Source: Diadema antillarum
Taxonomy: Eukaryota
DNA length: 64,000 nt
Direction of reading: 5' to 3'
NCBI RefSeq assembly: GCF_040938485.1
Contig: NW_027270954.1
Location: 496,001 to 560,000, forward strand
Each line of letters begins with the position of its first letter. Position 1 is the stretch's first letter. The position numbers were made by a program, and so were the translations under genes. The notes under the pieces were generated by a model that had not been told where the DNA came from, did not search any database, and worked only from the letters and a program-made list of their open reading frames with translations. Of this stretch, positions 13,303-49,542 are shown piece after piece.

Positions 13303-13701
13303 AGTAGTATTAGGATGTCTCGGGTGCCATAACTTAATTCTATTGTTTAGGACAATAGAATATGAAATATGAATATGAATATGAATATGATAGATCGATG
13401 AGTTATGAAATATGAATATGGGATATATAAATATGAAATTATGAGTATGAATAAGATATAAAATCAAATTAAAAAATTAATCAAATAAATAACGTGATAG
13501 GAGAACTGGAAAATGAATGACGTCACTCATTTAAATATTCATAAGGACGTCAGGAGCTTTATTCATTTGCATAAATGACGTCATAGGTTGTTTTGAGAAG
13601 AGAAAACAATAAAGAAAAAAAGAAAGGTGTATAGTGAATAGAGGGTGAACGAGTTGGGGCATGAAAGTGACGTCATGACATAGAACGCTGCATGAAGGTG
13701 T
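13303..13701 (+). repeat. Left TIR of Maverick A
   Basis: Reverse complement of 46782-47180. One mismatch seen (TAGGATG vs TATGATG). ATATGA-rich tract, three perfect TGACGTCA sites and one ATTTGCAT. Confidence 0.95.
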
Positions 13702-13786
13702 ATGTCAGGAGGATGTATAAATTCTCGCAGTCGACCATACTTGTTATCACTTTGCAAAAGGTTGGTTTAGTCATAAGAGGTATATC

Positions 13787-14248
13787 ATGTCTCAGTCTGA
13801 CGTTGATCCTGATAGTGAATGTTGCAAGGAGTTTCAAAAAACTGCGGAGAAAGCAGACCTACTCATGCTGATAGAGTACCTTACGTTGGTGGAATTGTTC
13901 AAGGAACTGAACAAAACCCCATCGAGCTACATCGACCAGTTAGTGTCGGACGACCCACAACTGAAAGTTCGACAAGCGGCTACGTACTTGGACCCTCAGA
14001 AGGTAGCCAAGTATTATCCTCATGCAGCCAGGGTGATGTGGATGAATCCAAAACTGATGGATCCATGCATGTTTACGGAGTACATGAAATATCTGCTCAG
14101 GAACGAGACAGTGGAGGATCTGAAAGAGAGACGGGAAAAACTGGCTCGTCACCTCGAAGGACTGGACGCCGCTGTGCGCGTCGTGTACCGTGCTATGGGG
14201 GAGGAGAGCGACCTGTCAGACAGCGTCATGAAGACATCATCGCTTTAG
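13787..14248 (+). CDS. ORF1 of A: 153-aa helical protein of unknown function
   Basis: Homologous and equal in length to B ORF1 (DLLMLxEYLTL, RHxEGxxAAVRVVYRA). Confidence 0.8.
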   Translation: MSQSDVDPDSECCKEFQKTAEKADLLMLIEYLTLVELFKELNKTPSSYIDQLVSDDPQLKVRQAATYLDPQKVAKYYPHAARVMWMNPKLMDPCMFTEYMKYLLRNETVEDLKERREKLARHLEGLDAAVRVVYRAMGEESDLSDSVMKTSSL

Positions 14249-14706
14249 ATACTTCATGGAGGGATGTCTTGTCAATCATCATTCGACAGACTACTACAAA
14301 ATCCTGTTTAAATGTGGATATGTCAAGAATATTTTCCACTAGTCAACGCATCATGGCATTGGAAGAATTTGAAAACGTGGAAATTGTCGAGCTAGAACCA
14401 GACGACTCATTCGAAGATTTCGTCAAGATTATACTTTCAAACTGTATTGGAAATGAGACACGAAAGAATGTACTGGAACGTGGAATGACAGCCGTTTGTT
14501 ATTTCTTGAAAATGTATATGCTTTCTAACCTGGAGGAACGATGTAAAGATGAACTGTTACTCTTGTTCACGAATGAACTGCGACGATATGATATACCATG
14601 GCCCTGTAAACCCCCCAAACGTAGTAAATTGCACCTGATAATGCACGTTATATTAGATGGGTTCTGTCAATTGTATACTGTGGATGTAAACAGAATAGCA
14701 ACTTAA
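13819..14706 (+). CDS. ORF2 of A: 295-aa protein overprinted on ORF1, unknown function
   Basis: The -1 frame stays open through ORF1. The C-terminal ~150 aa are homologous to B ORF2 (NCI, xCYF, RYxxxW, VDVNR). Confidence 0.7.
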   Translation: MLQGVSKNCGESRPTHADRVPYVGGIVQGTEQNPIELHRPVSVGRPTTESSTSGYVLGPSEGSQVLSSCSQGDVDESKTDGSMHVYGVHEISAQERDSGGSERETGKTGSSPRRTGRRCARRVPCYGGGERPVRQRHEDIIALDTSWRDVLSIIIRQTTTKSCLNVDMSRIFSTSQRIMALEEFENVEIVELEPDDSFEDFVKIILSNCIGNETRKNVLERGMTAVCYFLKMYMLSNLEERCKDELLLLFTNELRRYDIPWPCKPPKRSKLHLIMHVILDGFCQLYTVDVNRIAT

Positions 14707-14905
14707 TTGCATGTGTAAAACATTTATACGTATATTTCCGACAACTTGACTTTTTTATGTAGACTAGGTGATCAATAAACACATAGCATTAATGTACAAA
14801 CACTTGCTTTCTTCATCTTTTTATATTCAGTGTCTTTTAAATGAATGGGGTGAGTGACTTGCTGTTCATTGATGAGTTTTGTCAGAGGAGAGAGAAGACA
14901 GGAGC

Positions 14906-16006
14906 ATGGCGTCGTTAGACAACTTATTACGTAAAATCTATTACACGGCGTCAAACCAGGGAAGTTTTTGTGGAGCAACTAACTTGTGGAGAGCGGTTAG
15001 AGAACGAGGAATTGAGAATGTACCTCTTGAAACTATCAAAAGGTGGTTAGAAAAGCAAGACACGTACACACTGCATGCGCCTGCGAGAAAGAGGTTTGTG
15101 CGAAACAAAGTTGAGGTGAGAGGGGTCGACGAAATTTGGGAGGCTGATTTAGTCGATGTTCAGAACTTGAAAAAATATAACAATGGATACAGATACTTGT
15201 TAACTTGTATAGATGTGCTGTCAAAGTTCGCCTGGGTCGTCCCACTCAAAGATAAAACGGGGAAGAATATTGTTCAAGCTTTTCAGAAAATTACCAGTGG
15301 CGATCGCGTTCCCGAGATGTTACATACAGACAAGGGAAGTGAATTTATGAATAAAGAAGTCAAAAAATTCCTTAAGAATCGAGATATCCATTTCTTCACT
15401 ACGGAAAATGAAACAAAGGCATGTATTGTGGAAAGGTTTAACAGAACCTTAAAAGCACGAATGTGGCGGTATTTCACTTTTTCTAATTCATTCAAGTACA
15501 TAAACATTTTACAACAACTGGTCAAGGGGTACAATTCTACATTTCACACTAGCATTCGGATGAAACCGCTGGAAGTAAACATTGAAAATCAGCAACAAGC
15601 CTTGGATGCTCTGTACGGGGACAAACGTCACAGACGAAGAAATGTTATTCCCAAAGCGAAAAACTCTTTCCAATTCAAGATTGGGGATCAAGTTCGTATA
15701 AGTAGAAATAAATTGCGATTCGAAAAAGGATATGAAGCAAACTGGTCTGAGGAAATATTTACCGTCAGCGCTCGAAAGTCAAGGCGGATTCCAGTGTACA
15801 AACTAAAAGATTACAATGGAATTGAGTTAGACGGCACATTCTACCAAGACGAAATTGAAAAAGTGTCTAAAGCAAAGTATGAATTATATTCCGTTCAAAA
15901 AGTGTTAAAGACCCGAAAGAGAAAAGGAAAGAAACAATACCTAGTTCGGTGGAAGGGGTATGGCAAAGAATTTGACAGTTGGGTAGATCGGATTGAAAAT
16001 CGTTAA
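14906..16006 (+). CDS. INT: Retroviral-type (rve) integrase with C-terminal chromodomain, element A
   Basis: DDE motifs WEADLVD, LHTDKGSEF and VERFNRTL. Chromodomain YLVRWKGYGKEFDSW. Confidence 0.95.
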   Translation: MASLDNLLRKIYYTASNQGSFCGATNLWRAVRERGIENVPLETIKRWLEKQDTYTLHAPARKRFVRNKVEVRGVDEIWEADLVDVQNLKKYNNGYRYLLTCIDVLSKFAWVVPLKDKTGKNIVQAFQKITSGDRVPEMLHTDKGSEFMNKEVKKFLKNRDIHFFTTENETKACIVERFNRTLKARMWRYFTFSNSFKYINILQQLVKGYNSTFHTSIRMKPLEVNIENQQQALDALYGDKRHRRRNVIPKAKNSFQFKIGDQVRISRNKLRFEKGYEANWSEEIFTVSARKSRRIPVYKLKDYNGIELDGTFYQDEIEKVSKAKYELYSVQKVLKTRKRKGKKQYLVRWKGYGKEFDSWVDRIENR

Positions 16007-16068
16007 AAGTTAAAAGTTTCGCATACAGCCCTCATTCTCTCTATTGCGAGTGAAAAAGGAAGGTTGAC

Positions 16069-16845
16069 ATGGGTTCGCAATTTTACATTACTCTACCGAG
16101 TAATAGCTCAATGAAATATTTTCCGGAGAACAAGACATGCAGATATTCAACTAAATTGCACAGACCACTTACTCTAAATGAAGACTACGAGGTAGGGTTA
16201 GCTGAAATACAGTTTCAAAATTCATGGTACAACGTGAGAGAGGACAACAATTGGTTAGAGATTGTTACTTTCGACGAGAGTGACGGAACAGACACAGCCG
16301 TCCCACTGTCGTTCCGAGTAAACATACCAACTGGATACTACTTCACTGGTGACGAGCTGTGTGATGCGATAAATGATGTTTTGCCAGACCGACTTCAAAG
16401 AAATGTTGAATTTCATTACAAGAAGAAATCAAGACGCTGTAAAGTCGAAATACGAGAACACTTAGAAATATTGATGTCATGTCATCTGGCTATGATATTG
16501 GGTTTTGAACGTGAATGCCGAATCACTGAAACAACGATGAGTCCGTTACCAGTAGATGTCCATATGAATTTTCATACATTTTATGTCTACTCTGACATTG
16601 TTCAGTTTCAACATGTGGGTGATGTAGCTGTTCCCCTTTTGAGAACAGTCGCGGTGGTACCCAATAAGAGGCATGAAAATATTGTCAACACTTACGCCTC
16701 TCCACACTACGTTCCTCTGAAAATTTTCAGTTTTGAGACTATTGACATTATATTAACTACTGAAACGGGTAATGTTGTTCCATTTGAACGCGGGAAAGTC
16801 ATAGTGAAACTACACTTTCGTGAGCGCTCTTCGAATCTATCTTGA
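16069..16845 (+). CDS. Minor capsid (penton-like) protein, element A
   Basis: FYITLPSNSS N-terminus, YEVGLAEIQF, FYVYSDIV...PLLR and GKVIVKLHFR, typical of Polinton minor capsid proteins. Usual position upstream of the MCP. Confidence 0.85.
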   Translation: MGSQFYITLPSNSSMKYFPENKTCRYSTKLHRPLTLNEDYEVGLAEIQFQNSWYNVREDNNWLEIVTFDESDGTDTAVPLSFRVNIPTGYYFTGDELCDAINDVLPDRLQRNVEFHYKKKSRRCKVEIREHLEILMSCHLAMILGFERECRITETTMSPLPVDVHMNFHTFYVYSDIVQFQHVGDVAVPLLRTVAVVPNKRHENIVNTYASPHYVPLKIFSFETIDIILTTETGNVVPFERGKVIVKLHFRERSSNLS

Positions 16846-16847
16846 GA

Positions 16848-17294
16848 ATGGTGTATGTTAGATCATTTGGAAGAAGTGTCAATCATTTGTCTAGACCCTT
16901 CCATTCATATCAACGTGGTATGGGTATTCCCGTCTATAAAGGAGCTGCGATACAGCGAGGTCATGGACTGGGAAGTTTAGTAAAAGGCTTATTTCGTTCC
17001 GCTACCCCATTACTAAAAAAAGGAGCAATGGCGTTGGGACGAGAAGCTATGACAACGGGAATGAATATAATGCAAGACACATTAAGCGGTCAATCGTTTA
17101 AAAAAGCTGCTAAAAGAAATGTTTCAAAAGCAGGCAAGAGAATGGCTCACAAGGCTCTAAATGGTGTAAGAAGGAAGGTACAGAGCGGAGGAGGTAAATT
17201 TATTTTGGTTAAAAAGAAGCAACGAGGTCGGAAACGTGTCATTCGAGTTAAAGGAACCCGTGCGAAAAGACGTCGTCTTGATATTTTCGATTAA
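16848..17294 (+). CDS. Basic core/cement-like protein, element A
   Basis: QRGHG-LGSLVKGLFR amphipathic segment, K/R-rich C-terminus ending RRRLDIFD. Homologous to B 29272-29712. Confidence 0.8.
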   Translation: MVYVRSFGRSVNHLSRPFHSYQRGMGIPVYKGAAIQRGHGLGSLVKGLFRSATPLLKKGAMALGREAMTTGMNIMQDTLSGQSFKKAAKRNVSKAGKRMAHKALNGVRRKVQSGGGKFILVKKKQRGRKRVIRVKGTRAKRRRLDIFD

Positions 17295-17330
17295 ACCACG
17301 CCTATATCCTTCGTGTAATAAGCAATCATC

Positions 17331-17855: not shown

Positions 17856-18440
17856 AGTAGTAGTATAGGTGTACGTATAGCGTCATAAAAATATGATTCA
17901 TATTTCTATTGTTCTAGAACAAAAGAAATATGAAAAGACAAAAGAATTATGAATTATGAAATATGGATTATGATATGATTTATGATAAAAAGAAGGATTA
18001 TGGCATGATTTATGATAAAAATATGGATTATGATATGATTTATGATGAAAAGATGGATTATGATATGGATTATGATAAATCGATGAATTATGATAATAGA
18101 TATGAATTATGGATATTTGCATAACAATAGAAATAGGAAAGAACAAAAGAATGTATGAAATATGAAAAATGAAAGATGAATATTCATGAGATATGAATTA
18201 TAGATATTGACGATGGATGATGATTATGAAATATGAATATTTATGGATCGATATGAAATATGAAGAATGAATTATGAAAAATATGCTATTGTTTTAAGAA
18301 TCCGCGTCATTGTTTCATCATATTCTTTTGTTCTCACATCGAGAGATATTTTCGAATGCAATGGTCGAAATGGTCATAATGACGATTGCAATCGTATGCA
18401 TGACATTTGTTTGATTTGATGACGTCACTCCGACAAGTTC

Positions 18441-18875
18441 GGACCTGTCCTCTGACCGACGCTCGCCCGATCGAAAACAAAAGAACTTTAAAAAACGAAG
18501 AAATACATAAAAATGGGGGCGTGTCCTCTGACCGACGCTTGCGCAATGCTTGCGCAATCGAAGACAAAAGTCAGGGCGTGTCCACTGACCAACGCTCGGG
18601 GACTTAAAGACAAAAGACTGGAAAAACAAAGAAATACATAAGACTGGACCTCAAGTTCACGATAAGTTCGGACTTGTCCTCAGACCGACGCTCGCACACT
18701 CAAAGACAAAAGACTAGAAAAACAAAGAAATACATAAGACTGGACCTCAAGTTCACGATAAGTTCGGACTTGTCCTCTGACCCACGCTTGTACGCGAGCG
18801 AAGACAAAAGAATTTTTAAATAAAGAAATACATAAACTGGACCTGGAGCCAGTGACGGGTTCGGACTCGTCCTGC
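18441..18875 (+). repeat. Subterminal repeat cluster of B (GTCCTCTGACCGACGCT x5; AAGAAATACATAA x4)
   Basis: Visible imperfect units. Mirrored at ~32905-33340. Confidence 0.8.
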
Positions 18876-18887
18876 ATAAAACAATAA

Positions 18888-19925
18888 ATGCCTCATACAT
18901 ATTCAAAGAGATGGTGGCGTCCTTTGGAAAGCAAAAGAATAAAAACTCGAAGAACATGCGAGAGGGACACATTTCAATTTGAAACCTTCCGAGAGCATCA
19001 CATGTTACAGAATGTCTCAGCCGAACATCGCCAACACCTGGTGTCCCGAAATGCAGAGGACGGTGGAGAAGGTGGACTTGCTGATGTTGACGGAGTATCT
19101 AACTCTCATCGAAGTCTTGAAACGGGTGCAAAACGTGCCAGATTCTCCAATAGACGGTACTCCCGAAGATCCACAGCGCAAAGTGTTCCAGGCGGTTCAT
19201 CATTTGGACCCAATGACTGTGGAGAGAGTGTACCCTTACGTTGGCAGGGTGCTCTGGATGAGACCAGATCTCGTCGAGTGCGGTTTTTTCCTGGAGTACA
19301 TCAAATTTATTCTGAGGGGAGAGACTCAACAACAGCTGGAACAAAGAAGAGTCAACATAGGGAGACACGTGGAGGGGATAGAGGCCGCTGTGAGAGTGGT
19401 CTACAGGGCCTTGGGGCTCGAGACCGGCCTGCCCGACATTGTCTTGACGGACCCTCAGTGGAACGTGCTTTAGACGAACGACTGCTATTAACGGTGATAA
19501 AGGACACATTTCCTTCCGACTTTCACGCCGTAGACACCGAGACAATCTTACGCGCATGTCGGACAATTGCAAGCGAGGAACAATTTTCCCGTGTGCGACG
19601 AATCAAGCTTCGAGGCAATGAGAGGTTCGACGATTGTATAGAGGCCCTGCTCAAAAATTGTATAGAGAACCCCAATCATCCCAACAAGTACAAACGTTCG
19701 CTGATGGCTCTATGCTATTTTGTCAACATCTACCAATATGCCTGCATACCGGACGAGCGGAAAGAGGAATTTCGCGCGCAATTCGTGGAAGGACTCAAAC
19801 GCTACAAAGTGCGCTGGTCGGAACACGCTCCGAAAATGACTGTTGGACTAATGTCGCGATACGTTTTACATTTTTGTCTGTATATGTTGTATAATGTATG
19901 GAATGTAGATGTTAATAGAATGTGA
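18888..19925 (+). CDS. ORF2 of B (left-arm copy), overprinted on ORF1
   Basis: Open frame across ORF1. C-terminus homologous to A ORF2. The start may be the ATG at 18888 or at 19002. Confidence 0.7.
   Translation: MPHTYSKRWWRPLESKRIKTRRTCERDTFQFETFREHHMLQNVSAEHRQHLVSRNAEDGGEGGLADVDGVSNSHRSLETGAKRARFSNRRYSRRSTAQSVPGGSSFGPNDCGESVPLRWQGALDETRSRRVRFFPGVHQIYSEGRDSTTAGTKKSQHRETRGGDRGRCESGLQGLGARDRPARHCLDGPSVERALDERLLLTVIKDTFPSDFHAVDTETILRACRTIASEEQFSRVRRIKLRGNERFDDCIEALLKNCIENPNHPNKYKRSLMALCYFVNIYQYACIPDERKEEFRAQFVEGLKRYKVRWSEHAPKMTVGLMSRYVLHFCLYMLYNVWNVDVNRM
19012..19473 (+). CDS. ORF1 of B (left-arm copy), 153 aa
   Basis: The ATG at 19012 gives the same length as A ORF1, with clear homology. 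Confidence 0.8.
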   Translation: MSQPNIANTWCPEMQRTVEKVDLLMLTEYLTLIEVLKRVQNVPDSPIDGTPEDPQRKVFQAVHHLDPMTVERVYPYVGRVLWMRPDLVECGFFLEYIKFILRGETQQQLEQRRVNIGRHVEGIEAAVRVVYRALGLETGLPDIVLTDPQWNVL

Positions 19926-20112
19926 ATTGATTCAAGCAACGAAATTCGCTGCACTGTGTGTATGCGTGTACAATAAATGATGCGTTTCATTTTCAAATGA
20001 TTTTTTTTACTCGTTACCTTGTCTATCATTGATGCCTTTTATGTCATTGCAACGTGAAAGGAATGCCATTTCTGATGTTTGCTTCTGCAGTGTGTGGTTG
20101 CTGAGACGAATA

Positions 20113-21204
20113 ATGTCTAATTCATTTGAGAGAGCGTTAGAGGAAATCTATTACGATCCTCAACATCCAGCTAGTTTCGGTGGTGTCAGTAAGTTGTGGA
20201 ATGCGGTGAGAGAGGTGGAAACTGAAAAAGCGAGCTTGCAGGGTGTCAGAGACTGGTTAACGAAACAAGATGCGTATACAATGCACGCACCGGCGAGAAA
20301 GACATTTAAGAGAAATGTTGTGAAAGTGAGAGGAATCGACGAAATCTGGGAGGCTGATCTTGTAGATGTTCAAAATTTGAAAAGGTTTAATAATGGTTAT
20401 CGCTACTTACTGACGTGTATAGATGTACTGTCGAAATATGCTTGGGTGGTTCCTTTAAAAAACAAAAAATCAAAAGACATTGTCGGGGCATTCGAAAGCA
20501 TCTTGAAAGAGGGCCGAGTGCCTGTAATGCTACATACAGACAAAGGTTCGGAATTCACAAACAGACATTTTCAGAAATATCTCGAGAAAGAAGGCATTCA
20601 CTTCTACACAACAGAAAATGAAACCAAAGCCAGCGTTGCTGAACGATTCAATAGAACGCTGCGAACAAAAATGTGGCGCTTCTTCACATTCAAAAACACT
20701 TACAGGTATCTCGGTGTAATAAAAGATTTTGTCAAAGGCTATAACAACACCATTCATTCTAGTATCGGCATGAAACCAAAAGACGTGAATATTGAGAATC
20801 AAAAGCGTGCCATAAAAAGTCTCTACGGTAGGGCAATGCGAGGGAAGAAGCGTAAAGCTCCACGATTCAAGTATGAAATCGGAGATCAAGTTCGTATTAG
20901 TAAAAGCAAACTAAAGTTCGAAAAGGGTTACGAAGCAAATTTTTCGAGGGAGGTCTTTACAATCAGCTCCCGCGTCAATAGGAGGGTACCTGTCTACAGA
21001 ATAAAGGATTACAACGGGGAACGAGTGAAGGGTACGTTCTATGAAAGGGAATTGATAAGAGTTTCGAAAGACAAGGAGACTACTTACAACGTGGACAAGG
21101 TTTTACGCACGCGCATGCGCAATGGGCAGAAAGAATACCTAGTTCGTTGGTCAGGGTATGGCAAAGAATTTGATAGTTGGGTTCGACACTTAACTCCGCG
21201 TTAA
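20113..21204 (+). CDS. INT: rve integrase with chromodomain, B left-arm duplicate
   Basis: Intact DDE motifs and chromodomain. Nearly identical to 30577-31668. Confidence 0.95.
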   Translation: MSNSFERALEEIYYDPQHPASFGGVSKLWNAVREVETEKASLQGVRDWLTKQDAYTMHAPARKTFKRNVVKVRGIDEIWEADLVDVQNLKRFNNGYRYLLTCIDVLSKYAWVVPLKNKKSKDIVGAFESILKEGRVPVMLHTDKGSEFTNRHFQKYLEKEGIHFYTTENETKASVAERFNRTLRTKMWRFFTFKNTYRYLGVIKDFVKGYNNTIHSSIGMKPKDVNIENQKRAIKSLYGRAMRGKKRKAPRFKYEIGDQVRISKSKLKFEKGYEANFSREVFTISSRVNRRVPVYRIKDYNGERVKGTFYERELIRVSKDKETTYNVDKVLRTRMRNGQKEYLVRWSGYGKEFDSWVRHLTPR

Positions 21205-21271
21205 AAACACGATTCACGTTACTCTCGTTATCATTCTTCGCTTTGAACAAAGGAGAAGAGGCTGATCGAAC

Positions 21272-21365
21272 ATGGCTTCTCAATTTTACGTGACGCTGCC
21301 CAGTAATAGTTCCATGTCGTACTATCCAAATAACAAAACGTGTCAGTTTACAACGCGGCTTCACG
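21272..21365 (+). pseudogene. Truncated duplicate of the minor capsid 5' end (31 codons)
   Basis: MASQFYVTLPSNSS...TRLH, then a junction into polB sequence and a stop after 3 more codons. Confidence 0.9.
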
Positions 21366-22954
21366 AACTACCTTAAGCCCAAGACAATCGCGCTCATTCC
21401 CCAGGAAGGGTATGGAAAGGGGAAAAGACAGTCCTCCTTAGCCGGAGAGTGGCTTCATTTTGAGGCACAGCTTTCAGGATTTCACATTCGACATAGTTTC
21501 AATGGTGGGGAAAGAAAAGCACACGGACGTTTCGTAGATGGCTATGCCGAAAAAGATGATGAAAAACATGTTTGGGAGTTTCTCGGGTGCTTTTATCATT
21601 CTATGGCGGGAGAACTGGAGGGTGTTCGCTCTTCTACGAGGCGAAGCCCGAAGAAAAAATCCTTTACTATGATTTCACCAGTCTTTATCCCTTTATCAAT
21701 AAGTTCGGCAAATATCCTGTCGGCCATCCCAGAATTATCTATTCTAACTTCCCTTCACTGTCTCGAATTTTTGGACTCGTCAAATGTAAAATATTACCTC
21801 CTAGACGTCTGTTTCATCCAGTGCTCCCCCATCGCTCAGGGGGTAAACTTACTTTCCCTCTATGCAGGACCTGTGCAGACACCTTGAATCAGGGGCCCTG
21901 CAAGCACGCAGATAGGGAGCGTGAGTTAGAAGGCGTGTGGGTATCGGAGGAACTGAAAAAAGCTGTAGAGATGGGGTATACACAACTCCGAATGATCGAA
22001 GTATGGCACTTTGACAGGTATACAGTGTACGATCCCAAAACAAGAACGGGAGGACTGTTTGCGCAGTATATAGACAGCTTTATGAAAATGAAGCAGGAAG
22101 CCTCAGGCTACCCCGCCCATGCCAGTACTGAAGAAGAACGTGAAAAATACATTCGAGATTATTTGGCCCATGAGGGAATTCAATTAGACTCTAAAAACAT
22201 CGCGAAAAACCCCGGTTTACGCGCCATTGCCAAGGGCATTGTTAATGTGTTGTGGGGGAAATTTGCTGAGAGACCAAATCTGAAACAAACGCGCTTTGTC
22301 AAAACCAGCGCTGAGTTGTTAGATTTCTTAAAGGATCGCACTATCGAATTACAAGACATTCTCGTTCTAAACGACGACATGGTAGAAATTCATTTCAATC
22401 AAGCCGAAGGCTTCGTGGACCACAACGTCAACACAAATATCATAATAGCCAGTTTCACGACGGCATTGGCGCGACTGAAATTGTATTCTGTCTTGCAGAG
22501 GCTGAACGATAGGGTCTTGTATTACGACACTGATAGTGTAGTCTTTAGAACAGACCCAACAGTACAACATCACGACCCCAAAACCGGCGATTTCGTTGGT
22601 GACTTGACGGATGAACTTGGTGAAGGCGAGTTCATTCAAACCTGGCTTTGCGGTGGTCCTAAGAACTATAGTTATCGCACCAACAAAGGCAACACCGTGT
22701 GTAAGGTGCGTGGATTTACCTTGAACGAGGCAAACTCCCTCGTTATAAACCATGACTCTATGCGCGAATTGATACAAGGTGAACCGGGATGTCTGAAGAC
22801 TATTGTGGAAAATAGAATTCTCAGAGACGTAAAAAGCAAGTCCGTGTACACTTCCGAGAGAAAAAAAGACTACAGGGTAGTCTTCACGAAACGAGTTAGA
22901 TTACCAGGTGGCACGACACTGCCTTATGGACACGCGGACATTCCTCGCTTATAA
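21366..22954 (+). pseudogene. pPolB: 5'-truncated, internally deleted pPolB of B
   Basis: 21366-21599 reads NYLKPKTIALIP...VDGY...EFLGCFYH. A frame-shifting deletion then leads to SFYGGRTGG...YYDFTSLYP...YYDTDS. No TP or exonuclease domains. Confidence 0.92.
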
Positions 22955-23066
22955 AGACCTCAATGTGTCTAATTGCCAATCATTCGCTGTTTATACATTG
23001 TCGCAGAAGGTGGTACTTTCTCATCAGCTCTGTACCTACCGCTGGCATTGTCGTTGCTAGGAAATC

Positions 23067-33920: not shown

Positions 33921-33926
33921 ATCGGC
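33921..33926 (+). repeat. Right TSD of Maverick B (ATCGGC)
   Basis: Follows the ...CCTATACTACT terminus. Confidence 0.95.
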
Positions 33927-34736: not shown

Positions 34737-34780
34737 AGAAAGAGAGGGGAGGACTATTACATCAAATCACCTTATCTGTC

Positions 34781-35314: not shown

Positions 35315-35315
35315 C

Positions 35316-35347
<32 letters not shown>

Positions 35348-37726: not shown

Positions 37727-37741
37727 GATTGTCTATACAGA

Positions 37742-38086
37742 TTATTTCTTTCCGGTAAATGCTGTCGCTAGTGCTCCCACCGCTGGAACCACGAGTCTCA
37801 TCAATAGGGGTAAGAGAAATCCACCGCGTTGAGTTAGAAGTCTCTTCCTTTCTCTTAATGACGTGGACCGATCAGAGAGCTTTCGTAACTTCTGTTTATG
37901 TTTAGACAGAGTTCGCTTCTGTGTCGGTGAAATTTTGATATTACCGTTAATGACGTTCACGATGCATTCGCAAATGGCGTCTATCAACCCTCTGTCAGCG
38001 GTTTTCAGCAGGGCCCTTCGCTGTTGAGCTGTACAGTGTGCCAATGTCTTCAGAAGAACCGCATGTGTCTTGATACGACGAGACAT
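37742..38086 (-). CDS. 114-aa basic protein with QRGG-F hydrophobic tail (pX-like), element A
   Basis: QRGGFLLPLLMRLVVPAVGALA. Homologous to B 24221-24565. Confidence 0.8.
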   Translation of the reverse strand: MSRRIKTHAVLLKTLAHCTAQQRRALLKTADRGLIDAICECIVNVINGNIKISPTQKRTLSKHKQKLRKLSDRSTSLRERKRLLTQRGGFLLPLLMRLVVPAVGALATAFTGKK

Positions 38087-38124
38087 TTTTAAAAAATAAC
38101 GAGGTTAAGATGGGATCGTGCTCT

Positions 38125-38766
38125 TTATACTTTAGGAAGATATGCGAACTGCGTTTCTCCAGGAAAAATATTAGTTCTCAGTCTGAAGTCTTCTGGCGTG
38201 TCGGGTTTCAGATCAATGAAAAGGTAGCCATATTGTTCGTGGGTAGCATCGGCATACGCATCCTGGAAATACTTGGTGCGGCCTGGATACATTTGACGCC
38301 CTAAACATGATACTTGCATTTTATCTCTACTATTCTTAAACAAGCAATAATACTGAGTATTTAAGGAAATTGTCCTAGACTCTTTTCCGTTTCTGTACAT
38401 ATTTTGGGTTAGATAAATCAAACTTACATTTCTATGGTGACATCCCTTTGTAAAAAGAGCAGCCACTTTTCTACTATCACTAACAACATCCATCAAATCA
38501 TCAATTATAAATAACGTGGGTCGTGCGTTGTCAGTAAATGCATAAAAGTCTTCTGGTAGGTTTTCGTGAAATTCAATTTGAGGAATCTCATGCATCATTT
38601 CAGCATAATCCTTTTGAAATTCCCCATAAAACCAGACAATTTTTCGAGGAGCAGGGTTAAACATACGCTCACGCTGTTTAATTAGTCTTTTGACAAAAGA
38701 AGTCTTTCCCGAAAAAGTTGGTCCGACAACGCACATTGTAAAGGGATGTTTTAGACGGACATCCAT
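38125..38766 (-). CDS. A32/FtsK-like packaging ATPase, element A
   Basis: GPTFSGKT, FIIDDL, KGCHH. 213 aa. Confidence 0.93.
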   Translation of the reverse strand: MDVRLKHPFTMCVVGPTFSGKTSFVKRLIKQRERMFNPAPRKIVWFYGEFQKDYAEMMHEIPQIEFHENLPEDFYAFTDNARPTLFIIDDLMDVVSDSRKVAALFTKGCHHRNVSLIYLTQNMYRNGKESRTISLNTQYYCLFKNSRDKMQVSCLGRQMYPGRTKYFQDAYADATHEQYGYLFIDLKPDTPEDFRLRTNIFPGETQFAYLPKV

Positions 38767-39194: not shown

Positions 39195-39303
39195 TTTTTT
39201 TTTCAACACTATCTCAACCTCAAAAATAATACAACCTTACAGATCTAGAGTCGGGGACTAAATGAGGCAGCATTTTTTTACACCGGTGTATATAAAATAC
39301 TGG

Positions 39304-42300
39304 TTATGAAATATCCTTATGGCCATATGGTAGGGTTTTGGTTCCATCTCCAACTCGAACCCTTTTAGTAAAGACTACCCTGTAATCTTTTTTAGATTCG
39401 ATTGTGTGAATCGTCTTGGTTTTGGTGTCTCGGACAATTTTTGATTCATGAATGGTGCGTATTTCATCGCTTTTGGACATAACGAGTTCTTTGAGTGTGT
39501 CATGATTAATGACCATAGAATTAGTGTGGTTCAACGTGAACCCCCGCACCTTGCACACTGTGTTTCCTTTGTTAGTTTTGTAACTGTAATTCTTCGGTCC
39601 ACCACACACCCACGTGTGAATGTATTCATCATTAGTGGGGTCGATTTCATTTGTGAGATCACCTAGGTAATCGCCAGTCTTTGGGTCAAAGGGTTCGAGG
39701 GACTGATTCGTCTTAAAAACAACACTATCAGTATCATAATAGAGCGCCCTCTCTTCTAAGATTTCCAGAATTGAATACAGCTTCAATCTAGCCATTGCCG
39801 TTGTAAAGCTCGCTATCACTATATTAGTATTAACATTTTGCTCTACAAACCCGCGGGCGTTATTGTATTGCACTTCTATCATGTCTTCATTGATAACCCA
39901 CATGTCATGGACTGTAACGGAATCATCTCTAAAATACCGTAATAGTTCCGCTGGTGTTTTGACATATTTCGTTTGCTTATGATTATTCTTTTCAGCAAGT
40001 TTACCCCATAATGTATTTAAGAGCAATTTTGAAATGGCACGCATGCCCGGATTCTTCTCGATACGGTCAGGATCTAACGATACTCCTTCGTGATTGTGAT
40101 ATTTTTGAATGTAATTTATCCTATCGGATTCTGTCTCGACACTAGCTGGATAGCCCGACGACTCTTGCTTTATTTTCATGAAAGTATCGATATATTCCGC
40201 AAAAAGGCCCCCCTTGCATTCCCGTTTGTCATACTTGGTATATCGATCGAAGTGCCATACTTCAGAAATTTTGATATCGTAGTATCCTTTTTCTACTGCC
40301 TTTTTTACTTCTTCTGACACCCAAACGCCTTTAAGCGCTCTCTCGCGGTCCTCGTGCGTGCACCGAGTTTGGTTCAATGACTCTGCGCATGTAGCACACA
40401 GTGGGAAGGTGAGTTTACCCGAGGATCTGTAGGGGAGGACAGGGTGATACAAATCTTTGGGAGGAGTTATCTCACACTGGATGAGGCCAAACATTTTCTC
40501 GAGGGGTGGAAAGTTTGAGCGGATGATTCGAGGGTGGCCAATGGGGTACTTTCCAAATTTGTTTATGAATGGATACAGAGAAGTAAAATCATAGTATAAA
40601 ATTTTTTCACCCTGTTTTGCCTCATCAAAAAGTGAGCATCCATCAGTCCTACCACCAAAAAAAGAATCTCTTGGATTGAGGGGATTTTTGAATTTTTCGT
40701 GAAGATGCTGGACGCGGGCTTTCACAGCAGGATCTTTGATCTGCATGTCCCATTCATGCTCCCAGATGTAATGTACTATGTAACCTGCATTTCGGAGACG
40801 GTAGATTCTTTCCATAACTTCGTTATGGAGTTGACTCATTGATTTGTTACATCTTTTGTTGATTGTGAAGGGGTTAAAACATTGACTACATCCATGGTAA
40901 AAACAACCTAGAAATTCAAAAATGTGCTTTTCCTCCCCTACCTCGGCATACCCGTCCACATAGCGGCCATGAACCTTGCGCTCCCCACCAGTAAATGCAT
41001 ATTTGATATCGATCCCTCGTTCCTCAGCTTGATAATGTAACCATTTTCCAGCTTTAAGCGAATGACGCTTAGGGTTAGAATAACCGTCGTGCGGAATAAG
41101 GGCTATCTTGTTCGGTTTTAGAAAATTACTCCTGTAGAGATAATTACACGCGCTCGGAAGGGTGAGGCTGCGTAAGAAGGGATCGATGCCATCGGGATTA
41201 GCTTCTGTGGCACTTATTGTCTTGAAATGCAGGCGAAATAATTTACAACTTTCATGCAGTATTTTTACATCGCTCTTGCAGTACTCCAAAATTTCTTTTT
41301 GAAAATCAAACACAAAATTGTCAGGAAGGCTATCGTACCATGCATCAAATTCTGTCTTCGCTTCTTTCATCATGGTGTTTGTCCCGAAATATTTCTTATC
41401 GGGAATGGGACCAACGTAATTTTGATTATCTTTTACGTTAAACAGATGTGGGAAATATCCCTTCTTCAGCTCTTTGATACCGAAAGTTTTTGGAAGTTTG
41501 GCCAAGCCCATTTGGAAGAAGTTTAAGCTATCTTTAATTACGATTTTGGGGTCTTGTGTGCTCAGACACATGATCTTTCCTCCATTCATTATGACTTCGG
41601 GGATTATCCCTTTACGAACGAGGTGATTAAGAAGGAAATATGTGTCATACGCCTTAGCGTTGTGTGCAATAGCTATTGCCTTGTGGTTATCTTCTGACAA
41701 CAACCATGTACAAAATCGTTCCAGGGTGTCCTCCCCCTGAAAAGTGATCTCTCTTCCTTCATCTACATTACCGCACCAAAGACAGCCCCACCCATCGGGA
41801 GTTACACCATCCATACAGTTACTACAATCCCAGGTAGCGTGTACTAGATTAGGAACATGAGAAGTGGTATTCTGGGTACATTCAAAATCAAAGAAAATAT
41901 ATCTCTGTGGGTCTGGCAAATCAGCTTGCGTGGTAGGTTTTGATTTCTTTTTTTTCTTTTTCATAGCTGCAAGTTCTTTCTCAGCCTCAGTGGGGACGTA
42001 GTATTTGCTTTCTTTTGTTACTTTCATGTAGCATTCATGGGTGGGTCCATCGACATAATCTTTACATGTCTGACAAAATATCTTGGAACAGTCATGTTTA
42101 TCAAATATGCCTGGAAATACTTCCGAATCAAACACGCGCGCACATTTTAGGCATTTACGACGGGTCTTACAGGCAGTTGATCCCTTGAAAATTGTCACCG
42201 AATGAGCTTTAAAGCATTGCTCAGTGAGGAACGTCATGTTACAATCGGCGCACGTTCGAGGATCGCGTTTAATGGGGTCAGTGCGATTGCAATTTGTACT

Positions 42301-43059
42301 GAAACAATCGTAGCAGGTATTACAACAACTGTGAGTTCTGGGATCGTTGTAAACTTCATGGCATTCTTCGCACAAATGCTTGACACACAAGAATGCAGAA
42401 ACATTTTTGATGACATTATAATGACCGGATTCAGTCAAATACAAGTACAATGTCTTCTCAGCTGGGGGGCCTGCATATATCATGGCATGTTTTTTTCGAC
42501 CTCTGTATATGATCAATCTATATTCAGGTAGTAAGACTTGTTGAAAGGCGTCGTACTGACTCGAATCAACCTCTCCTTTAGGAACGCCAGCTAGATCGTG
42601 AAGTTTTGCGGCTTCATGAAGTAAACCCTTTGTGGGTGGTCTGTTAGTTCGAGACCAGGTTCGATATTTTCGATCATTATTAACGTAATAGCGCGAGATG
42701 ACAATTGCGCTTGCAAAACAGGTTTTTTCTTCTTTGCTGGAGGGAACGGTGATGATGGAAGTTTTTCTTATGGATGCCTCGTCATCAGGCAAGCCATCCA
42801 TTTTTCGCGTATATCCACCAGTGGGGTTTTGCACATGGTGAAATCTGATAGTAAAACCAGGTTTGAGGAAAAAGTTCTGGTTACTATTGAGAACTCGTTC
42901 TATCCGTTCTAATATAAGCGCGATGTCAAAGTGCCTGACCACTGCCCAGGGAAAAGCGATCGGAATATTCAATTGGTCCGAGACTAGCACCAGTCGCACA
43001 TAGTCTCTTTCATTCGCGTATCGTGAAGAAGGAGCGTTCGTAGCTCCTCGAGAGATGAT
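39304..43059 (-). CDS. pPolB: Protein-primed family B DNA polymerase, element A (main frame)
   Basis: Exonuclease FFDFEC, HNAKAYD and YCKSD. Polymerase YYDFTSLYP, KLLLNTLWGK and YYDTDS. Cys/His of a vOTU-like segment (CFASAI...GHYNVI). Vsr-like insert (VDGY...EFLGCFYHGC). The frame is open from 43059 but has no ATG near its start. Confidence 0.93.
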   Translation of the reverse strand: MISRGATNAPSSRYANERDYVRLVLVSDQLNIPIAFPWAVVRHFDIALILERIERVLNSNQNFFLKPGFTIRFHHVQNPTGGYTRKMDGLPDDEASIRKTSIITVPSSKEEKTCFASAIVISRYYVNNDRKYRTWSRTNRPPTKGLLHEAAKLHDLAGVPKGEVDSSQYDAFQQVLLPEYRLIIYRGRKKHAMIYAGPPAEKTLYLYLTESGHYNVIKNVSAFLCVKHLCEECHEVYNDPRTHSCCNTCYDCFSTNCNRTDPIKRDPRTCADCNMTFLTEQCFKAHSVTIFKGSTACKTRRKCLKCARVFDSEVFPGIFDKHDCSKIFCQTCKDYVDGPTHECYMKVTKESKYYVPTEAEKELAAMKKKKKKSKPTTQADLPDPQRYIFFDFECTQNTTSHVPNLVHATWDCSNCMDGVTPDGWGCLWCGNVDEGREITFQGEDTLERFCTWLLSEDNHKAIAIAHNAKAYDTYFLLNHLVRKGIIPEVIMNGGKIMCLSTQDPKIVIKDSLNFFQMGLAKLPKTFGIKELKKGYFPHLFNVKDNQNYVGPIPDKKYFGTNTMMKEAKTEFDAWYDSLPDNFVFDFQKEILEYCKSDVKILHESCKLFRLHFKTISATEANPDGIDPFLRSLTLPSACNYLYRSNFLKPNKIALIPHDGYSNPKRHSLKAGKWLHYQAEERGIDIKYAFTGGERKVHGRYVDGYAEVGEEKHIFEFLGCFYHGCSQCFNPFTINKRCNKSMSQLHNEVMERIYRLRNAGYIVHYIWEHEWDMQIKDPAVKARVQHLHEKFKNPLNPRDSFFGGRTDGCSLFDEAKQGEKILYYDFTSLYPFINKFGKYPIGHPRIIRSNFPPLEKMFGLIQCEITPPKDLYHPVLPYRSSGKLTFPLCATCAESLNQTRCTHEDRERALKGVWVSEEVKKAVEKGYYDIKISEVWHFDRYTKYDKRECKGGLFAEYIDTFMKIKQESSGYPASVETESDRINYIQKYHNHEGVSLDPDRIEKNPGMRAISKLLLNTLWGKLAEKNNHKQTKYVKTPAELLRYFRDDSVTVHDMWVINEDMIEVQYNNARGFVEQNVNTNIVIASFTTAMARLKLYSILEILEERALYYDTDSVVFKTNQSLEPFDPKTGDYLGDLTNEIDPTNDEYIHTWVCGGPKNYSYKTNKGNTVCKVRGFTLNHTNSMVINHDTLKELVMSKSDEIRTIHESKIVRDTKTKTIHTIESKKDYRVVFTKRVRVGDGTKTLPYGHKDIS

Positions 43060-44213
43060 CTAATATAGTCAAGAACATGTCTAATTGAAGAATGATCGGG
43101 TATATCTCCGACAAAGTCGTACCAGACTTCTCGTACGCCGAAGCGTTTATTAATTCGTGAATCTATGAATTTCCATTGAGGTGAGGCTGTTTTTGTAGTC
43201 TCATTGCTCTGGCTTGAACAATCGCTCTCCGATTCATTTATGTCTGACGAAGAAGTCAGTGGGGGGCGAGACTGATTGTGGGGTGGGTCTAAATGCTTTG
43301 TTTTTCTCTTTCTCTTGCCTCCGTGCTGTTTCGTCTCAGAGGGAAGATCAGAATTTTGTCTATTTCCTCCACTTTGTACATGACCACATGGAGTATGATG
43401 ACAGTTGTTATCAGAGTAGTCAAAATCATCGAGATCTTCGTCATCGTTATCATGATATCGGGTAAGGGGAGGAGGGGCATGTTCTGGTACGTAATTTCCG
43501 GGGGTACCATGAAAATGTGAAGGGCCAGGAATATCATAAATGTTATTGTCTTCTCCTTTTTTCCGTCTTGACCTTTGTCGGAGACTCAGTTTCGATCTTT
43601 TGAATTGGGAACCGCTTCCGATGTCCATTCTACGCTTCATTCCTCTTTGTTGTTTTGGAGAAGAGAGAGATATTTTTTCTTTTACAATTGGACATTCCGA
43701 TCGTTTTTTGTTTCCTTTCAATGAATCAGACACACGTCTTGCTTCCTTTCCCTTTGACTTTCTTCTTTCAGCAATTAATTCGGATTTTTTCTTTTTCAAA
43801 CCACCACCTTTCCCTCTATTAGAGCGGGGTTTTTCCCGCTTTCTAACTCGTGACTGTTGTGGATTAGGATCAACAAAGTCATCATCATCAGACCAATTGC
43901 AAACGGAACTAACAGGAACATTTTTTGAAAGTAATATTGGTTTCGACGAAACTGCTGAAGCGGCAATAACTTCAGTTGTAGAGGCGTTTTTACAAATACC
44001 CACATCTCTATCTGAACTAGGAAAAGAAACATCGCATTCACTTACCTCATTTTGATCTGCCGGATGAACGCTAGGAGCACGACGGACTAAATCAACTGTT
44101 CTGTTCACAATCCTTTGAATTTGAGAAGACGTGAGGTCGTACAAGTTTGAAATCGTGTTGGTTAGATTGTTTCTAAGAGTAGAACTGCGATGTGAAGGAT
44201 GGTTTTCATCCAT
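42984..44213 (-). CDS. 409-aa low-complexity ORF, probable N-terminal part of pPolB separated by a frameshift
   Basis: K/R/S/D-rich with QSGG and QHGG motifs. The C-terminal helical segment overlaps the polB frame by ~75 nt. Confidence 0.65.
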   Translation of the reverse strand: MDENHPSHRSSTLRNNLTNTISNLYDLTSSQIQRIVNRTVDLVRRAPSVHPADQNEVSECDVSFPSSDRDVGICKNASTTEVIAASAVSSKPILLSKNVPVSSVCNWSDDDDFVDPNPQQSRVRKREKPRSNRGKGGGLKKKKSELIAERRKSKGKEARRVSDSLKGNKKRSECPIVKEKISLSSPKQQRGMKRRMDIGSGSQFKRSKLSLRQRSRRKKGEDNNIYDIPGPSHFHGTPGNYVPEHAPPPLTRYHDNDDEDLDDFDYSDNNCHHTPCGHVQSGGNRQNSDLPSETKQHGGKRKRKTKHLDPPHNQSRPPLTSSSDINESESDCSSQSNETTKTASPQWKFIDSRINKRFGVREVWYDFVGDIPDHSSIRHVLDYIRSSLEELRTLLLHDTRMKETMCDWC

Positions 44214-44645
44214 TTTACGGCTTAAAGTGAGTAACAAGTTAACTCTAAAAAAGTGCAAACTTGACAAGTATTCAAACGCTAAATACAGTCATAATGGTTT
44301 CAGTCACCCCTCTTGGCGTCTAGATTCTGTATAAACGTAAAGTTACAGAGCAATGACCACACGATATAGCTCGTGTATAAAATAGGAAGAAATGTGGAGA
44401 ACTGGGTTTTGCTCAGGCCTTTTTATCTAACTCTCGCTCCATTTTCCCGTCACTTTACTTTCAAGCTGAGACATGTAAGTCATCGGGAAGGACCGATCAA
44501 TAAATAAGGGATTATTTTCTCAAGTGGAGGACAAACAATTCTGTACTTGCACATAGGTCCCGCATAGGAAGTTCCATCCATTGTTCTTACGTAGACCTAC
44601 TTGGAAGAATTCTTTTGAGTAAGGATTAACTTTGAATCGTTCGAC

Positions 44646-45650
44646 GTTAATGGACTGTGGACAAAGGTGTTTTTCAGTCCGGAGTTCTCTTAATGGAGAG
44701 ACAATATACTTGCACTTGAGTCCCCGAATAACAGTCATCGTTCTTTACTATTGTACCTAACAAACTTTCTTTACAGGACGTATTAACAAATTTTTTGAAC
44801 TACGTTAATGGACTGACGACTTGGACTGTCGACAAAGGTGTTTTTTAGTCCGGAGTTCTCTTAATGGAGAGACAATAAACTTGTTCTTGAGTCCTCAAAT
44901 AACAGTCATCGTTCTTTACTATTATACCTAGCAAACTTTCTTTACAGTACGCATTATATTTGTACTGCGTTAATGGACAGGCGACAAAAGTGTTTTTCAG
45001 TCCGAAGTTCTCTTAATGGAGAGACAATAAACTTGTTCTTGAGTCCCCGAATAACAGTCATCGTTCTTTACTATTGTACCTAACAAACTTTCTTTACAGT
45101 GCGTATTAACCAATTTTTTTTGAACTACGTTAATGGACTGACGACTTGGACTGTCGACAAAGGTGTTTTTTAGTCCGAAGTTCTCTTAATGGAGAGACAA
45201 TAAACTTGTTCTTGAGTCCTCAAATAACAGTCATCGTTCTTTACTTTTATACCTAGCAAACTTTCTTTACAGTGCGCATTATATTTGTACTGCGTTAATG
45301 GACAGGGGACAAAAGTGTTTTTCAGTCCGGAATTCTCTTAATGGAGAGACAATAAACTTGTTCTTGAGTCCCCGAATAACAGTCATCGTTCTTTACTATT
45401 GTACCTAACAAACTTTCTTTACAGTGCGTATTAACCAATTTTTTTTTTTTTTTGAACTACGTTAATGGACTGACGACTTGGACTGTCGACAAAGGTGTTT
45501 TTTAGTCCGGAGTTCTCTTAATGGAGAGACAATAAACTTGTTCTTGAGTCCCCAAATAATAGTCATCGTTCTTTACTATTATACCTAGCAAACTTTCTTT
45601 ACAGTGCGCATTAACCGATATTTGTACTGCGTTAATGGACTGGGGACTTG
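44646..45650 (+). repeat. Tandem array of ~158-170-bp units with dimeric higher-order structure
   Basis: GTTAATGGAC starts at 44646, 44804, 44969, 45129, 45294, 45461 and 45631. Confidence 0.92.
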
Positions 45651-46103
45651 GACTGAAAAACACCTCATCTCTTCATCATGCATACTCACTCACTTCCCCC
45701 CTCCTCTTCTCTCACTAGCATGCAATTCAGTACATTTTGATCTTAGAGGCAAACAAATACCCATCCAAACACATATGCTCACTCATAGTTATCCAATCAA
45801 TGTCTCATAGTTATTTTTCAACGAAATATCTATAAGGAACAACGTAATAAGGACGGTAAAATGAAACAAGTTCTCTATATGATGTATTTTTTATTATTAT
45901 TCCTCATTCTCCTTTGACATTGACATTAAAAAAAAGAATAAAATAACATAAATTGTTTTTTTTCTTCAAATCAGTTAAGTCCACATAATTTCTCCATCGG
46001 TCTCCTGAATCTCGGCCTTTATTTTCTGTATTCATCTTGATTTAAAATAATCTTTCTTGTATAGCCTTCCTTTTTTTTTCTCCCATCGTTCAGCCGATCC
46101 ACT

Positions 46104-46649
46104 TCACCCTCTCACATGTTGCCCTTGAATGGCGTCGTTGATGTTCTTAATCACCGATGTAAAAGCTCTGAATTCCTCCATGGTGAGCGTGATTCCCTTC
46201 TTGGTAGGTAGTTCTTCGTGGTTTTTCTCAAAGTACTCACGAATGTCAATGTAAGTCTTGCTGCGGAACGTCTTGGCCACGATGTACTTCAGGCGGTCCG
46301 GTTTCACGCTGATGGACACTTTGCAAATAATTTTTGAATCATCCTCATCTTTCGTTCCCGGAGTATGGCTCGTAGGTTCGGGGTTCCCCGTGGTCTTCTT
46401 TCCTTGCACGTTTCCACCTCCTCTCATTCTTTTACGTGAAAGATCAACACGATGTTCACCTTCTTCCATGTTTTTCCGCTTAGACGACTGGGGAAAACAT
46501 GTTCCCTCCTCCATATATAGACGGTCTGGAGAATAGTCCACGGTGCAATCACTCCCGACTTCCCCCTGAATACTGCTCATGTCTTGCGAGCCTTCAGGCG
46601 ATGGGGCTGATGGCGTGTTATACACGTAGTTGTAATAACTCTGCTTCAT
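46104..46649 (-). CDS. PC4/Sub1-like ssDNA-binding domain protein, element A
   Basis: TFRSKTYIDIREYF...PTKKGITLTMEEF matches the PC4 fold signature (IDIREY...P.KKGI.L). Disordered N-terminus. Confidence 0.8.
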   Translation of the reverse strand: MKQSYYNYVYNTPSAPSPEGSQDMSSIQGEVGSDCTVDYSPDRLYMEEGTCFPQSSKRKNMEEGEHRVDLSRKRMRGGGNVQGKKTTGNPEPTSHTPGTKDEDDSKIICKVSISVKPDRLKYIVAKTFRSKTYIDIREYFEKNHEELPTKKGITLTMEEFRAFTSVIKNINDAIQGQHVRG

Positions 46650-46781
46650 TTTTCTCTCGTTCTTGTAGGACTGTTTCGTCTGGTTGACAAAATTGTGTCT
46701 GTTTCCTTCTCAGAGGGAAGGAGTATATATAACCATATATTATACGAATGCACTGTATGTATAAATCACACGTACTCCTGC

Positions 46782-47180
46782 ACACCTTCATGCAGCGTTC
46801 TATGTCATGACGTCACTTTCATGCCCCAACTCGTTCACCCTCTATTCACTATACACCTTTCTTTTTTTCTTTATTGTTTTCTCTTCTCAAAACAACCTAT
46901 GACGTCATTTATGCAAATGAATAAAGCTCCTGACGTCCTTATGAATATTTAAATGAGTGACGTCATTCATTTTCCAGTTCTCCTATCACGTTATTTATTT
47001 GATTAATTTTTTAATTTGATTTTATATCTTATTCATACTCATAATTTCATATTTATATATCCCATATTCATATTTCATAACTCATCGATCTATCATATTC
47101 ATATTCATATTCATATTTCATATTCTATTGTCCTAAACAATAGAATTAAGTTATGGCACCCGAGACATCATAATACTACT
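46782..47180 (-). repeat. Right TIR of Maverick A
   Basis: Reverse complement of 13303-13701. Confidence 0.95.
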
Positions 47181-49535: not shown

Positions 49536-49542
49536 CCCATTA

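What the first reader, a model, noticed from the sequence alone, without database searches (positions are those of the whole stretch)
13303..47180. Nested pair with reciprocal lesions: A lost its capsid gene to B, B supplies a capsid gene but lacks polB
Seen: B inserted into A's MCP, which is otherwise intact when rejoined (444 aa). B carries an intact 443-aa MCP, penton, protease and ATPase. A carries the only polymerase and the PC4 gene. The termini are similar (AGTAGTATTAGG vs AGTAGTATAGG). Inference: the 33.9-kb composite has every core function, so it could act as a helper/parasite or mutually complementing unit. B disables the helper's capsid while depending on its polymerase. Caveat: A's polB appears frameshifted near its N-terminus (separate finding), so complementation may need another copy.
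Basis: partly seen in the sequence, partly recalled or inferred. Interest (0 to 1): 0.8.

Follow-up and report, generated by a model that had tools for sequence, protein, structure and literature searches.

The report
Defective Maverick nested in another Maverick
Two related virus-like mobile elements (Mavericks/Polintons) sit one inside the other in a sea-urchin genome. The inner one is a rearranged copy without a working DNA polymerase that landed in the outer one's capsid gene, which looks like ordinary transposon nesting rather than a demonstrated partnership.

Summary
The nesting is real. Element A (13303-47180; 399-bp TIRs, 6-bp TSD) is a textbook Maverick/Polinton in Diadema antillarum. 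Element B (17856-33920; 16,065 bp, its own 6-bp TSD) sits in A's major capsid gene in the opposite orientation.

A and B are collinear members of one family (47-70% aa identity). Structure prediction confirms B's double jelly-roll capsid protein and its penton. Pfam confirms integrase, protease, ATPase, pPolB and PC4.

- B does carry a polB remnant, about the last third of the gene, with two lesions.
- B's ends are 3.5-kb inverted arms (99.3% identical). Each arm carries an integrase and an accessory gene, so one end of B was replaced by an inverted copy of the other.

A's polB has one frameshift, so the composite has no intact polymerase. The shared termini are the family-wide (AGT)n end motif, not an A-B-specific match. 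B's capsid gene has at least 28 near-identical copies in the host genome.

Best reading: a non-autonomous, terminally rearranged Maverick landed by chance in an older Maverick. Mutual complementation is unsupported. This is a new member of a known kind, of moderate interest.

The parts
13303..47180 (+). Element A with its insert (33,878 bp; 17,807 bp without B and one TSD copy)
   Evidence: 399-bp TIRs and a 6-bp TSD
13297..13302 (.). A target-site duplication, left copy (GCTGTA); right copy at 47181-47186
13303..13701 (.). A left TIR, starting with (AGT)2 and holding subterminal TATGA-rich repeats; right TIR is 46782-47180
13787..14706 (+). A accessory gene next to the TIR, conserved in two reading frames
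14879..16006 (+). A integrase (rve core plus chromodomain)
   Evidence: Pfam
16069..16845 (+). A penton (minor capsid protein)
   Evidence: 64% identical to B's penton, whose fold matches the mavirus and adenovirus pentons
16842..17294 (+). A small basic protein between penton and MCP (the PW position)
   Evidence: gene order as in PMC8097293
17331..34736 (+). A major capsid gene, broken once (1 insertion: element B)
   Evidence: Two stop-free pieces of 175 and 269 codons, each 70% identical to B's MCP
17856..33920 (-). Element B (16,065 bp), oriented opposite to A; TSD ATCGGC at 17850-17855 and 33921-33926
17856..21368 (.). B left arm of the 3.5-kb inverted duplication; its end carries (AGT)3
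   Evidence: 99.3% identical to the right arm, with 22 mismatches
30413..33920 (.). B right arm (native end); its end carries (AGT)2
18888..19925 (+). B accessory two-frame gene, left copy; twin at 31855-32892 (-)
20029..21204 (+). B integrase, left copy (rve plus chromodomain); twin at 30577-31752 (-)
21363..22954 (+). B polB remnant, broken twice (1 large 5' truncation at the arm junction; 1 internal deletion with a frame change)
   Evidence: Pfam DNA_pol_B_2
23513..24181 (+). B packaging ATPase (A32-like)
   Evidence: 67% identical to A's
24221..25360 (+). B 114-aa and 257-aa genes (the PM and PZ positions)
25361..27322 (.). B central AT-rich gap without long ORFs; unrelated to A's gap
27323..27844 (-). 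B adenain-like protease
   Evidence: Pfam Peptidase_C5
27888..29237 (-). B major capsid protein, intact (443 aa from its ATG)
   Evidence: Model pLDDT 85; best match Sputnik MCP at E 2e-16
29272..29712 (-). B small basic protein (the PW position)
29748..30509 (-). B penton, intact
   Evidence: Model pLDDT 95; matches mavirus penton at E 3e-11
34733..35314 (+). A adenain-like protease
35315..36973 (.). A central AT-rich gap
36974..38086 (-). A 250-aa and 114-aa genes (the PZ and PM positions)
38125..38766 (-). A packaging ATPase
   Evidence: Pfam Pox_A32
39304..44267 (-). A protein-primed polB, broken once (1 frameshift)
   Evidence: Two frame pieces abut and cover 100% of the 1,655-aa relative P0121
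44645..45647 (.). Tandem array of 152/325-bp units between polB and PC4
46104..46649 (-). A PC4-domain gene; B has no counterpart
   Evidence: Pfam PC4 at E 3e-15

Best explanation
A is a standard 17.8-kb Maverick/Polinton (adintovirus-like endogenous virus) of the sea urchin Diadema antillarum, and it integrated first.

B belongs to a second lineage of the same family. Before or at its integration, one terminal block of B was replaced by an inverted copy of its other 3.5-kb end. The lost block held the PC4 region and about two thirds of polB. The copied end carries an accessory gene, the integrase and the start of the penton gene. The result is a near unit-length genome with two good ends and two integrase genes but no polymerase, so it is non-autonomous.

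B's integrase, or one supplied in trans, then inserted it into A's capsid gene with a 6-bp TSD. Chromodomain integrases favour silent, repeat-rich chromatin, so landing in an older copy is an ordinary TE-in-TE event.

Shown: the anatomy, gene identities, lesions and order of insertion. Inferred: the origin of the arms by template switching or panhandle-type end repair during protein-primed replication, and the targeting of heterochromatin.
For: - TSDs and TIRs for both elements.
- A and B are collinear, with 47-70% aa identity across 12 gene pairs.
- B's arms are 99.3% identical. The left arm ends with a partial penton start abutting a truncated polB, which marks illegitimate recombination rather than a designed TIR.
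- One B end carries (AGT)3 and the other (AGT)2, as expected from slippage in jump-back initiation (PMC8097293).
- B is 16.1 kb, within the constrained ~17 kb +-10%.
- The integrases carry chromodomains.
- The flanks are repeat-rich.
- The MCP gene is only 7.5% of A.
- At least 28 B-type MCP copies, 98-100% identical, occur in the host.
- Precedent: insect polintons with gene-bearing 2-kb TIRs, and mobile polB-lacking copies.
Against: - Only one locus was seen, so it is unknown whether B's rearrangement is private to this copy or typical of its lineage.
- An in-situ origin of the arms after integration cannot be excluded.
- Differences between the arms are concentrated in the outer half. A single recent duplication does not predict this.
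Confidence: 0.75

Rival explanations
1. One reading: the 33.9-kb composite is a mutually complementing helper/parasite unit. B supplies the capsid, A supplies the polymerase and PC4, and the pair can move together on A's ends.
For: - The lesions are complementary on paper.
- A's TIRs are almost identical.
- The termini share about 11 of 12 letters and TATGA-rich subterminal repeats.
Against: - A's polB is frameshifted and B's is a remnant, so the pair holds no intact polymerase.
- The composite is twice the constrained genome size.
- The shared end motif is family-wide.
- The proteins are only 47-70% identical.
- No second copy of the composite is known.
Confidence: 0.08
2. B's architecture is typical of a dedicated satellite lineage: polB-less, with integrase-bearing long TIRs. 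That lineage has amplified at the expense of autonomous Mavericks, and insertion into a capsid gene is interference with the helper.
For: - At least 28 near-identical B-type MCP genes occur in the host, yet no B-type polB was found among the proteins on record.
- B is unit-length despite the rearrangement.
- polB-lacking polintons appear mobile in insects.
Against: - The absence of polB from annotation is uninformative: even this locus's intact penton, protease, ATPase and integrase are not on record.
- A partial penton start next to a truncated polB looks accidental.
- A single insertion gives no target preference.
Confidence: 0.14
3. The nesting, or B's inverted arms, are an assembly artefact such as a chimeric join or a fold-back read.
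For: Long inverted duplications can arise from assembly errors (general knowledge).
Against: - Both B ends abut the two halves of one reading frame with a perfect 6-bp TSD.
- The arms are 9 kb apart and differ at 22 positions plus indels, unlike a fold-back artefact.
Confidence: 0.03

Closest known systems
Vertebrate Mavericks (Barreat & Katzourakis 2021, PMC8097293)
   Same: - Two convergent gene modules: int, minor capsid, PW, MCP, protease on one strand; pPolB, ATPase, PM, PZ on the other.
- About 17 kb, TIRs of about 400 bp, 6-bp TSD and the (AGT)2 end motif.
- Most copies are defective.
   Different: - The host is an echinoderm.
- A has a PC4 gene and a roughly 400-aa low-complexity N-terminal extension of polB.
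- The integrase has a chromodomain.
- One copy is nested in another.
Adintoviruses (Starrett et al. 2021, PMC8502044)
   Same: An animal-associated polinton lineage with adenain, a hexon-like MCP, penton, pPolB and integrase. A coral adintovirus PolB appears among the relatives of B's remnant.
   Different: Both elements here are integrated and both are defective. No free genome was examined.
Insect polintons with gene-bearing TIRs and polB-lacking mobile copies (bioRxiv 10.1101/2025.02.07.637071)
   Same: - Long TIRs that duplicate core genes.
- Copies without polB that still seem to have moved, while more complete relatives keep polB.
   Different: - There the duplicated genes are hexon and adenain; here they are the integrase and an accessory gene.
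- Here the polB loss coincides with the arm junction.
- Mobility of B's form is not shown.
Defective adenovirus-type genomes repaired by copying the opposite terminus (own knowledge); helper-dependent linear plasmid pairs such as pGKL1/pGKL2 (abstract of PMC13348850)
   Same: Protein-primed linear replicons in which a defective or dependent genome keeps both origins and relies on a partner's polymerase.
   Different: No replication or dependence has been observed here. The resemblance is architectural only.

Membership tests
Maverick/Polinton | [quoted passage not shown] | tested here: met
   DNA_pol_B_2 at E 5e-48 in A (1 frameshift); remnant in B at E 6e-26
Maverick/Polinton | Retrovirus-like rve integrase | tested here: met
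   rve plus Chromo in A and in both B copies
Maverick/Polinton | Double jelly-roll major capsid protein | tested here: met
   AF2 model with pLDDT 85. Foldseek matches Sputnik, PBCV-1 and mavirus MCPs at E about 1e-15
Maverick/Polinton | [quoted passage not shown] | tested here: met
   pLDDT 95; matches the mavirus penton at E 3e-11 and adenovirus penton base; position as described in PMC4028283
Maverick/Polinton | Adenain-like protease and A32/FtsK-type packaging ATPase | tested here: met
   Peptidase_C5 and Pox_A32 in both elements
Maverick/Polinton | TIRs, 6-bp TSD, repeated end motif, size 15-20 kb | tested here: met
   compared with PMC8097293
Helper/satellite pair of virus-like elements | The dependent element lacks a function that the partner supplies intact | tested here: not met
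   B lacks a working polB, but A's polB is itself frameshifted
Helper/satellite pair of virus-like elements | Recurrent association or co-mobilisation of the two elements | not tested
This needs other genomic copies.
Defective genome with inverted terminal duplication | Loss of an essential gene, with both termini kept through an inverted copy of one end, at near unit length | tested here: met
   3.5-kb arms, truncated polB, 16,065 bp
Defective genome with inverted terminal duplication | Propagation of the rearranged form | not tested
   Only this copy was examined.

The most novel reading that the evidence does not exclude
B represents an amplified satellite lineage of Mavericks: unit-length, without a polymerase, with integrase-bearing 3.5-kb terminal arms. 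It lives off autonomous Mavericks, and its insertions into helper capsid genes act as interference, an animal-genome analogue of virophage or PICI behaviour.
Probability: 0.08. Interest if true: 0.7.

Novelty: new member of a known kind. Interest (0 to 1): 0.36.

Why it matters
The locus is a clean, datable example of Maverick-in-Maverick nesting in an echinoderm.

B's structure is the more interesting part. It has a truncated polymerase, a gene-bearing inverted duplication of one end, unequal (AGT)n counts at its two ends, unit length and a perfect TSD. That is the footprint expected if these elements replicate as free protein-primed linear DNA before integrating. It also shows that polymerase-less forms can still be integrated.

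The locus does not by itself show a helper-parasite partnership.

Tried and rejected
- Exact look-ups of 19 other open reading frames of A and B found none on record. Copy numbers could therefore be obtained only for B's MCP, and the absence of an annotated B-type or A-type polB in the host cannot be used as evidence.
- Rfam found nothing in the window.
- No Maverick remnants lie in the flanks.
- The two central gaps share no similarity.
- Pfam gives nothing for the accessory, PW, PM and PZ genes.
- TIR divergence is too imprecise for dating: 1 of 399 positions in A against 22 of 3,513 in B.
- The frameshift in A's polB is not in a homopolymer longer than 3, so a simple homopolymer sequencing error is less likely, though not excluded.

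Full report
**Host and setting.** The window has no N. An SRCR exon lies at 55986-56378 (Pfam E 3e-32). B's capsid protein is 100% identical to 'F54H12.2-like' proteins of Diadema antillarum, so the host is that sea urchin. The flanks are repeat-rich: a 1.1-kb foldback-type element occurs twice. The flanks hold no further Maverick pieces.

**Element A.** A spans 13303-47180. It has 399-bp TIRs with one mismatch and a 6-bp TSD. Without B it measures 17,807 bp.

One strand carries an accessory gene, an rve-chromodomain integrase, the penton, a small basic protein, the MCP and an adenain-like protease. The other strand carries pPolB, an A32-type ATPase, a 114-aa gene and a 250-aa gene, plus a PC4-domain gene near the far TIR.

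This is the two-module, convergent architecture described for vertebrate Mavericks. It shares their ~17 kb size, ~400-bp TIRs, 6-bp TSD and (AGT)2 end motif (PMC8097293).

**Element B.** B spans 17856-33920 (16,065 bp). It is flanked by a perfect 6-bp TSD and lies inside A's MCP frame in the opposite orientation. Gene for gene it is collinear with A at 47-70% amino-acid identity, so it is a second lineage of the same family.

- An AlphaFold model of its MCP has pLDDT 85 and pTM 0.86. It matches the Sputnik, iridovirus, PBCV-1 and mavirus double jelly-roll capsid proteins.
- Its penton model has pLDDT 95. It matches the mavirus penton and adenovirus penton bases.
- Protease and ATPase are confirmed by Pfam.

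B's ends are not short TIRs. They are 3.5-kb inverted arms, 99.3% identical with 22 mismatches and a few indels. Each arm carries the accessory gene, a complete integrase and the first codons of the penton gene.

On the left side the arm runs straight into a polB remnant. The remnant keeps about the last third of the gene, including polymerase motifs visible. It lacks the exonuclease half and the N-terminal extension, has no ATG start, and also carries an internal deletion that changes the frame. B has no PC4 gene.

One terminal block of a once-complete B-type genome was therefore replaced by an inverted copy of the other end.

**Count of breaks.**
- A has two broken genes: the MCP (1 insertion, namely B) and polB (1 frameshift).
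- B has one broken gene: polB (1 large 5' truncation and 1 internal deletion with a frame change).
- All other listed genes of both elements are open.

A's two MCP pieces were compared separately with B's MCP. They have 175 and 269 codons, no stops, 70% identity and no gaps.

A's two polB frame pieces were searched and compared separately. On the closest full-length relative (P0121, 1,655 aa) they abut and together cover 100%. Relatives encode one continuous protein, so this is a lesion or a sequencing error, not a feature. It is not in a homopolymer run.

**Interpretation.** The order of events is fixed by the nesting: A first, then B.

The TSD flanks B's present ends, and the left end is part of the duplicated arm. 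The simplest reading is that B was already rearranged when it integrated.

The arm junction joins a partial penton start to a truncated polB, which is the mark of illegitimate recombination. The two ends carry (AGT)3 and (AGT)2. Such end repeats serve jump-back initiation in protein-primed replication (PMC8097293). B is still unit-length.

Together these point to template switching or end repair during extrachromosomal protein-primed replication, followed by integrase-mediated insertion. This step is an inference.

B is therefore non-autonomous for replication. Whether A is its helper is a separate claim, and it fails on present evidence for four reasons:
- A's own polB is frameshifted.
- The shared termini are the family-wide motif.
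- The composite is twice the constrained genome size.
- B's own lineage is abundant and young. Its exact MCP is found on 9 contigs, 15 further variants are 96-100% identical, and there are at least 28 gene copies in total.

The MCP occupies 7.5% of A, so a hit there needs no special explanation. Chromodomain integrases are expected to favour silent repeat-rich chromatin (established knowledge from chromoviruses; an inference here).

**Precedent.** Insect polintons with roughly 2-kb gene-bearing TIRs, and apparently mobile polB-lacking copies, have been reported (bioRxiv 10.1101/2025.02.07.637071).

**Limits.**
- Only B's MCP is on record for this genome. The other 19 open frames of A and B that I looked up are not. 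The lack of an annotated A- or B-type polB in the host therefore says nothing.
- This is the main untested point.

Noticed in passing
13787-14706 (+); 18888-19925 (+); 31855-32892 (-): The gene next to the TIR is conserved in two reading frames. The frame switch falls in the same ~35-nt zone in A and in B (51-53% identity upstream, 27% downstream). This suggests a short intron or a programmed frameshift rather than a lesion. There is no Pfam match.
   Followed up: partly
17856-21368 vs 30413-33920: Differences between B's two arms are uneven: 18 of 22 mismatches lie in the outer 1,750 nt. Over the first 250 nt, B's arms are more diverged than A's TIRs, although B inserted later. This is unexplained. 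The terminal tandem repeats may be mutation-prone, or the arms may not have been identical at integration.
   Followed up: partly
13361-13451; 17959-18095; 33683-33820: Both elements carry short TATGA(A/T)-rich tandem repeats just inside their termini. B also has 95/96-bp repeats further in (18579-18844 and 32936-33200). They may be protein-binding arrays.
   Followed up: no
44645-45647: A tandem array of 152/325-bp units fills the space between the start of A's polB and the PC4 gene.
   Followed up: no
46104-46649 (-): A PC4 (single-stranded DNA-binding coactivator) domain gene lies next to polB. A Strongylocentrotus gene model (P0143) also joins a PC4 domain to a polB-like N-terminus, so the pairing seems typical of echinoderm Mavericks. 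A search of papers mentioning both PC4 and polintons found only one, on C. elegans, which I did not open.
   Followed up: partly
2914-4072 and 47455-48545: Two copies of a 1.1-kb element with ~171-bp internal inverted repeats (foldback/MITE-like) are 96-99% identical and lie in opposite orientation. One sits 275 bp from A's right end. Other dispersed repeats are at 9357-9811/63035-63462 and 49538-50702.
   Followed up: no
53254-56378 (-), 60442-60705 (-): Host exons lie downstream of the element, including a clear SRCR domain exon at 55986-56378. The gene model was not worked out.
   Followed up: no
25361-27322 and 35315-36973: Both elements have a 1.7-2.0-kb AT-rich stretch without long ORFs where the two gene modules converge. 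The two stretches share no similarity. B's holds (TA)n and 8-bp microsatellites.
   Followed up: partly
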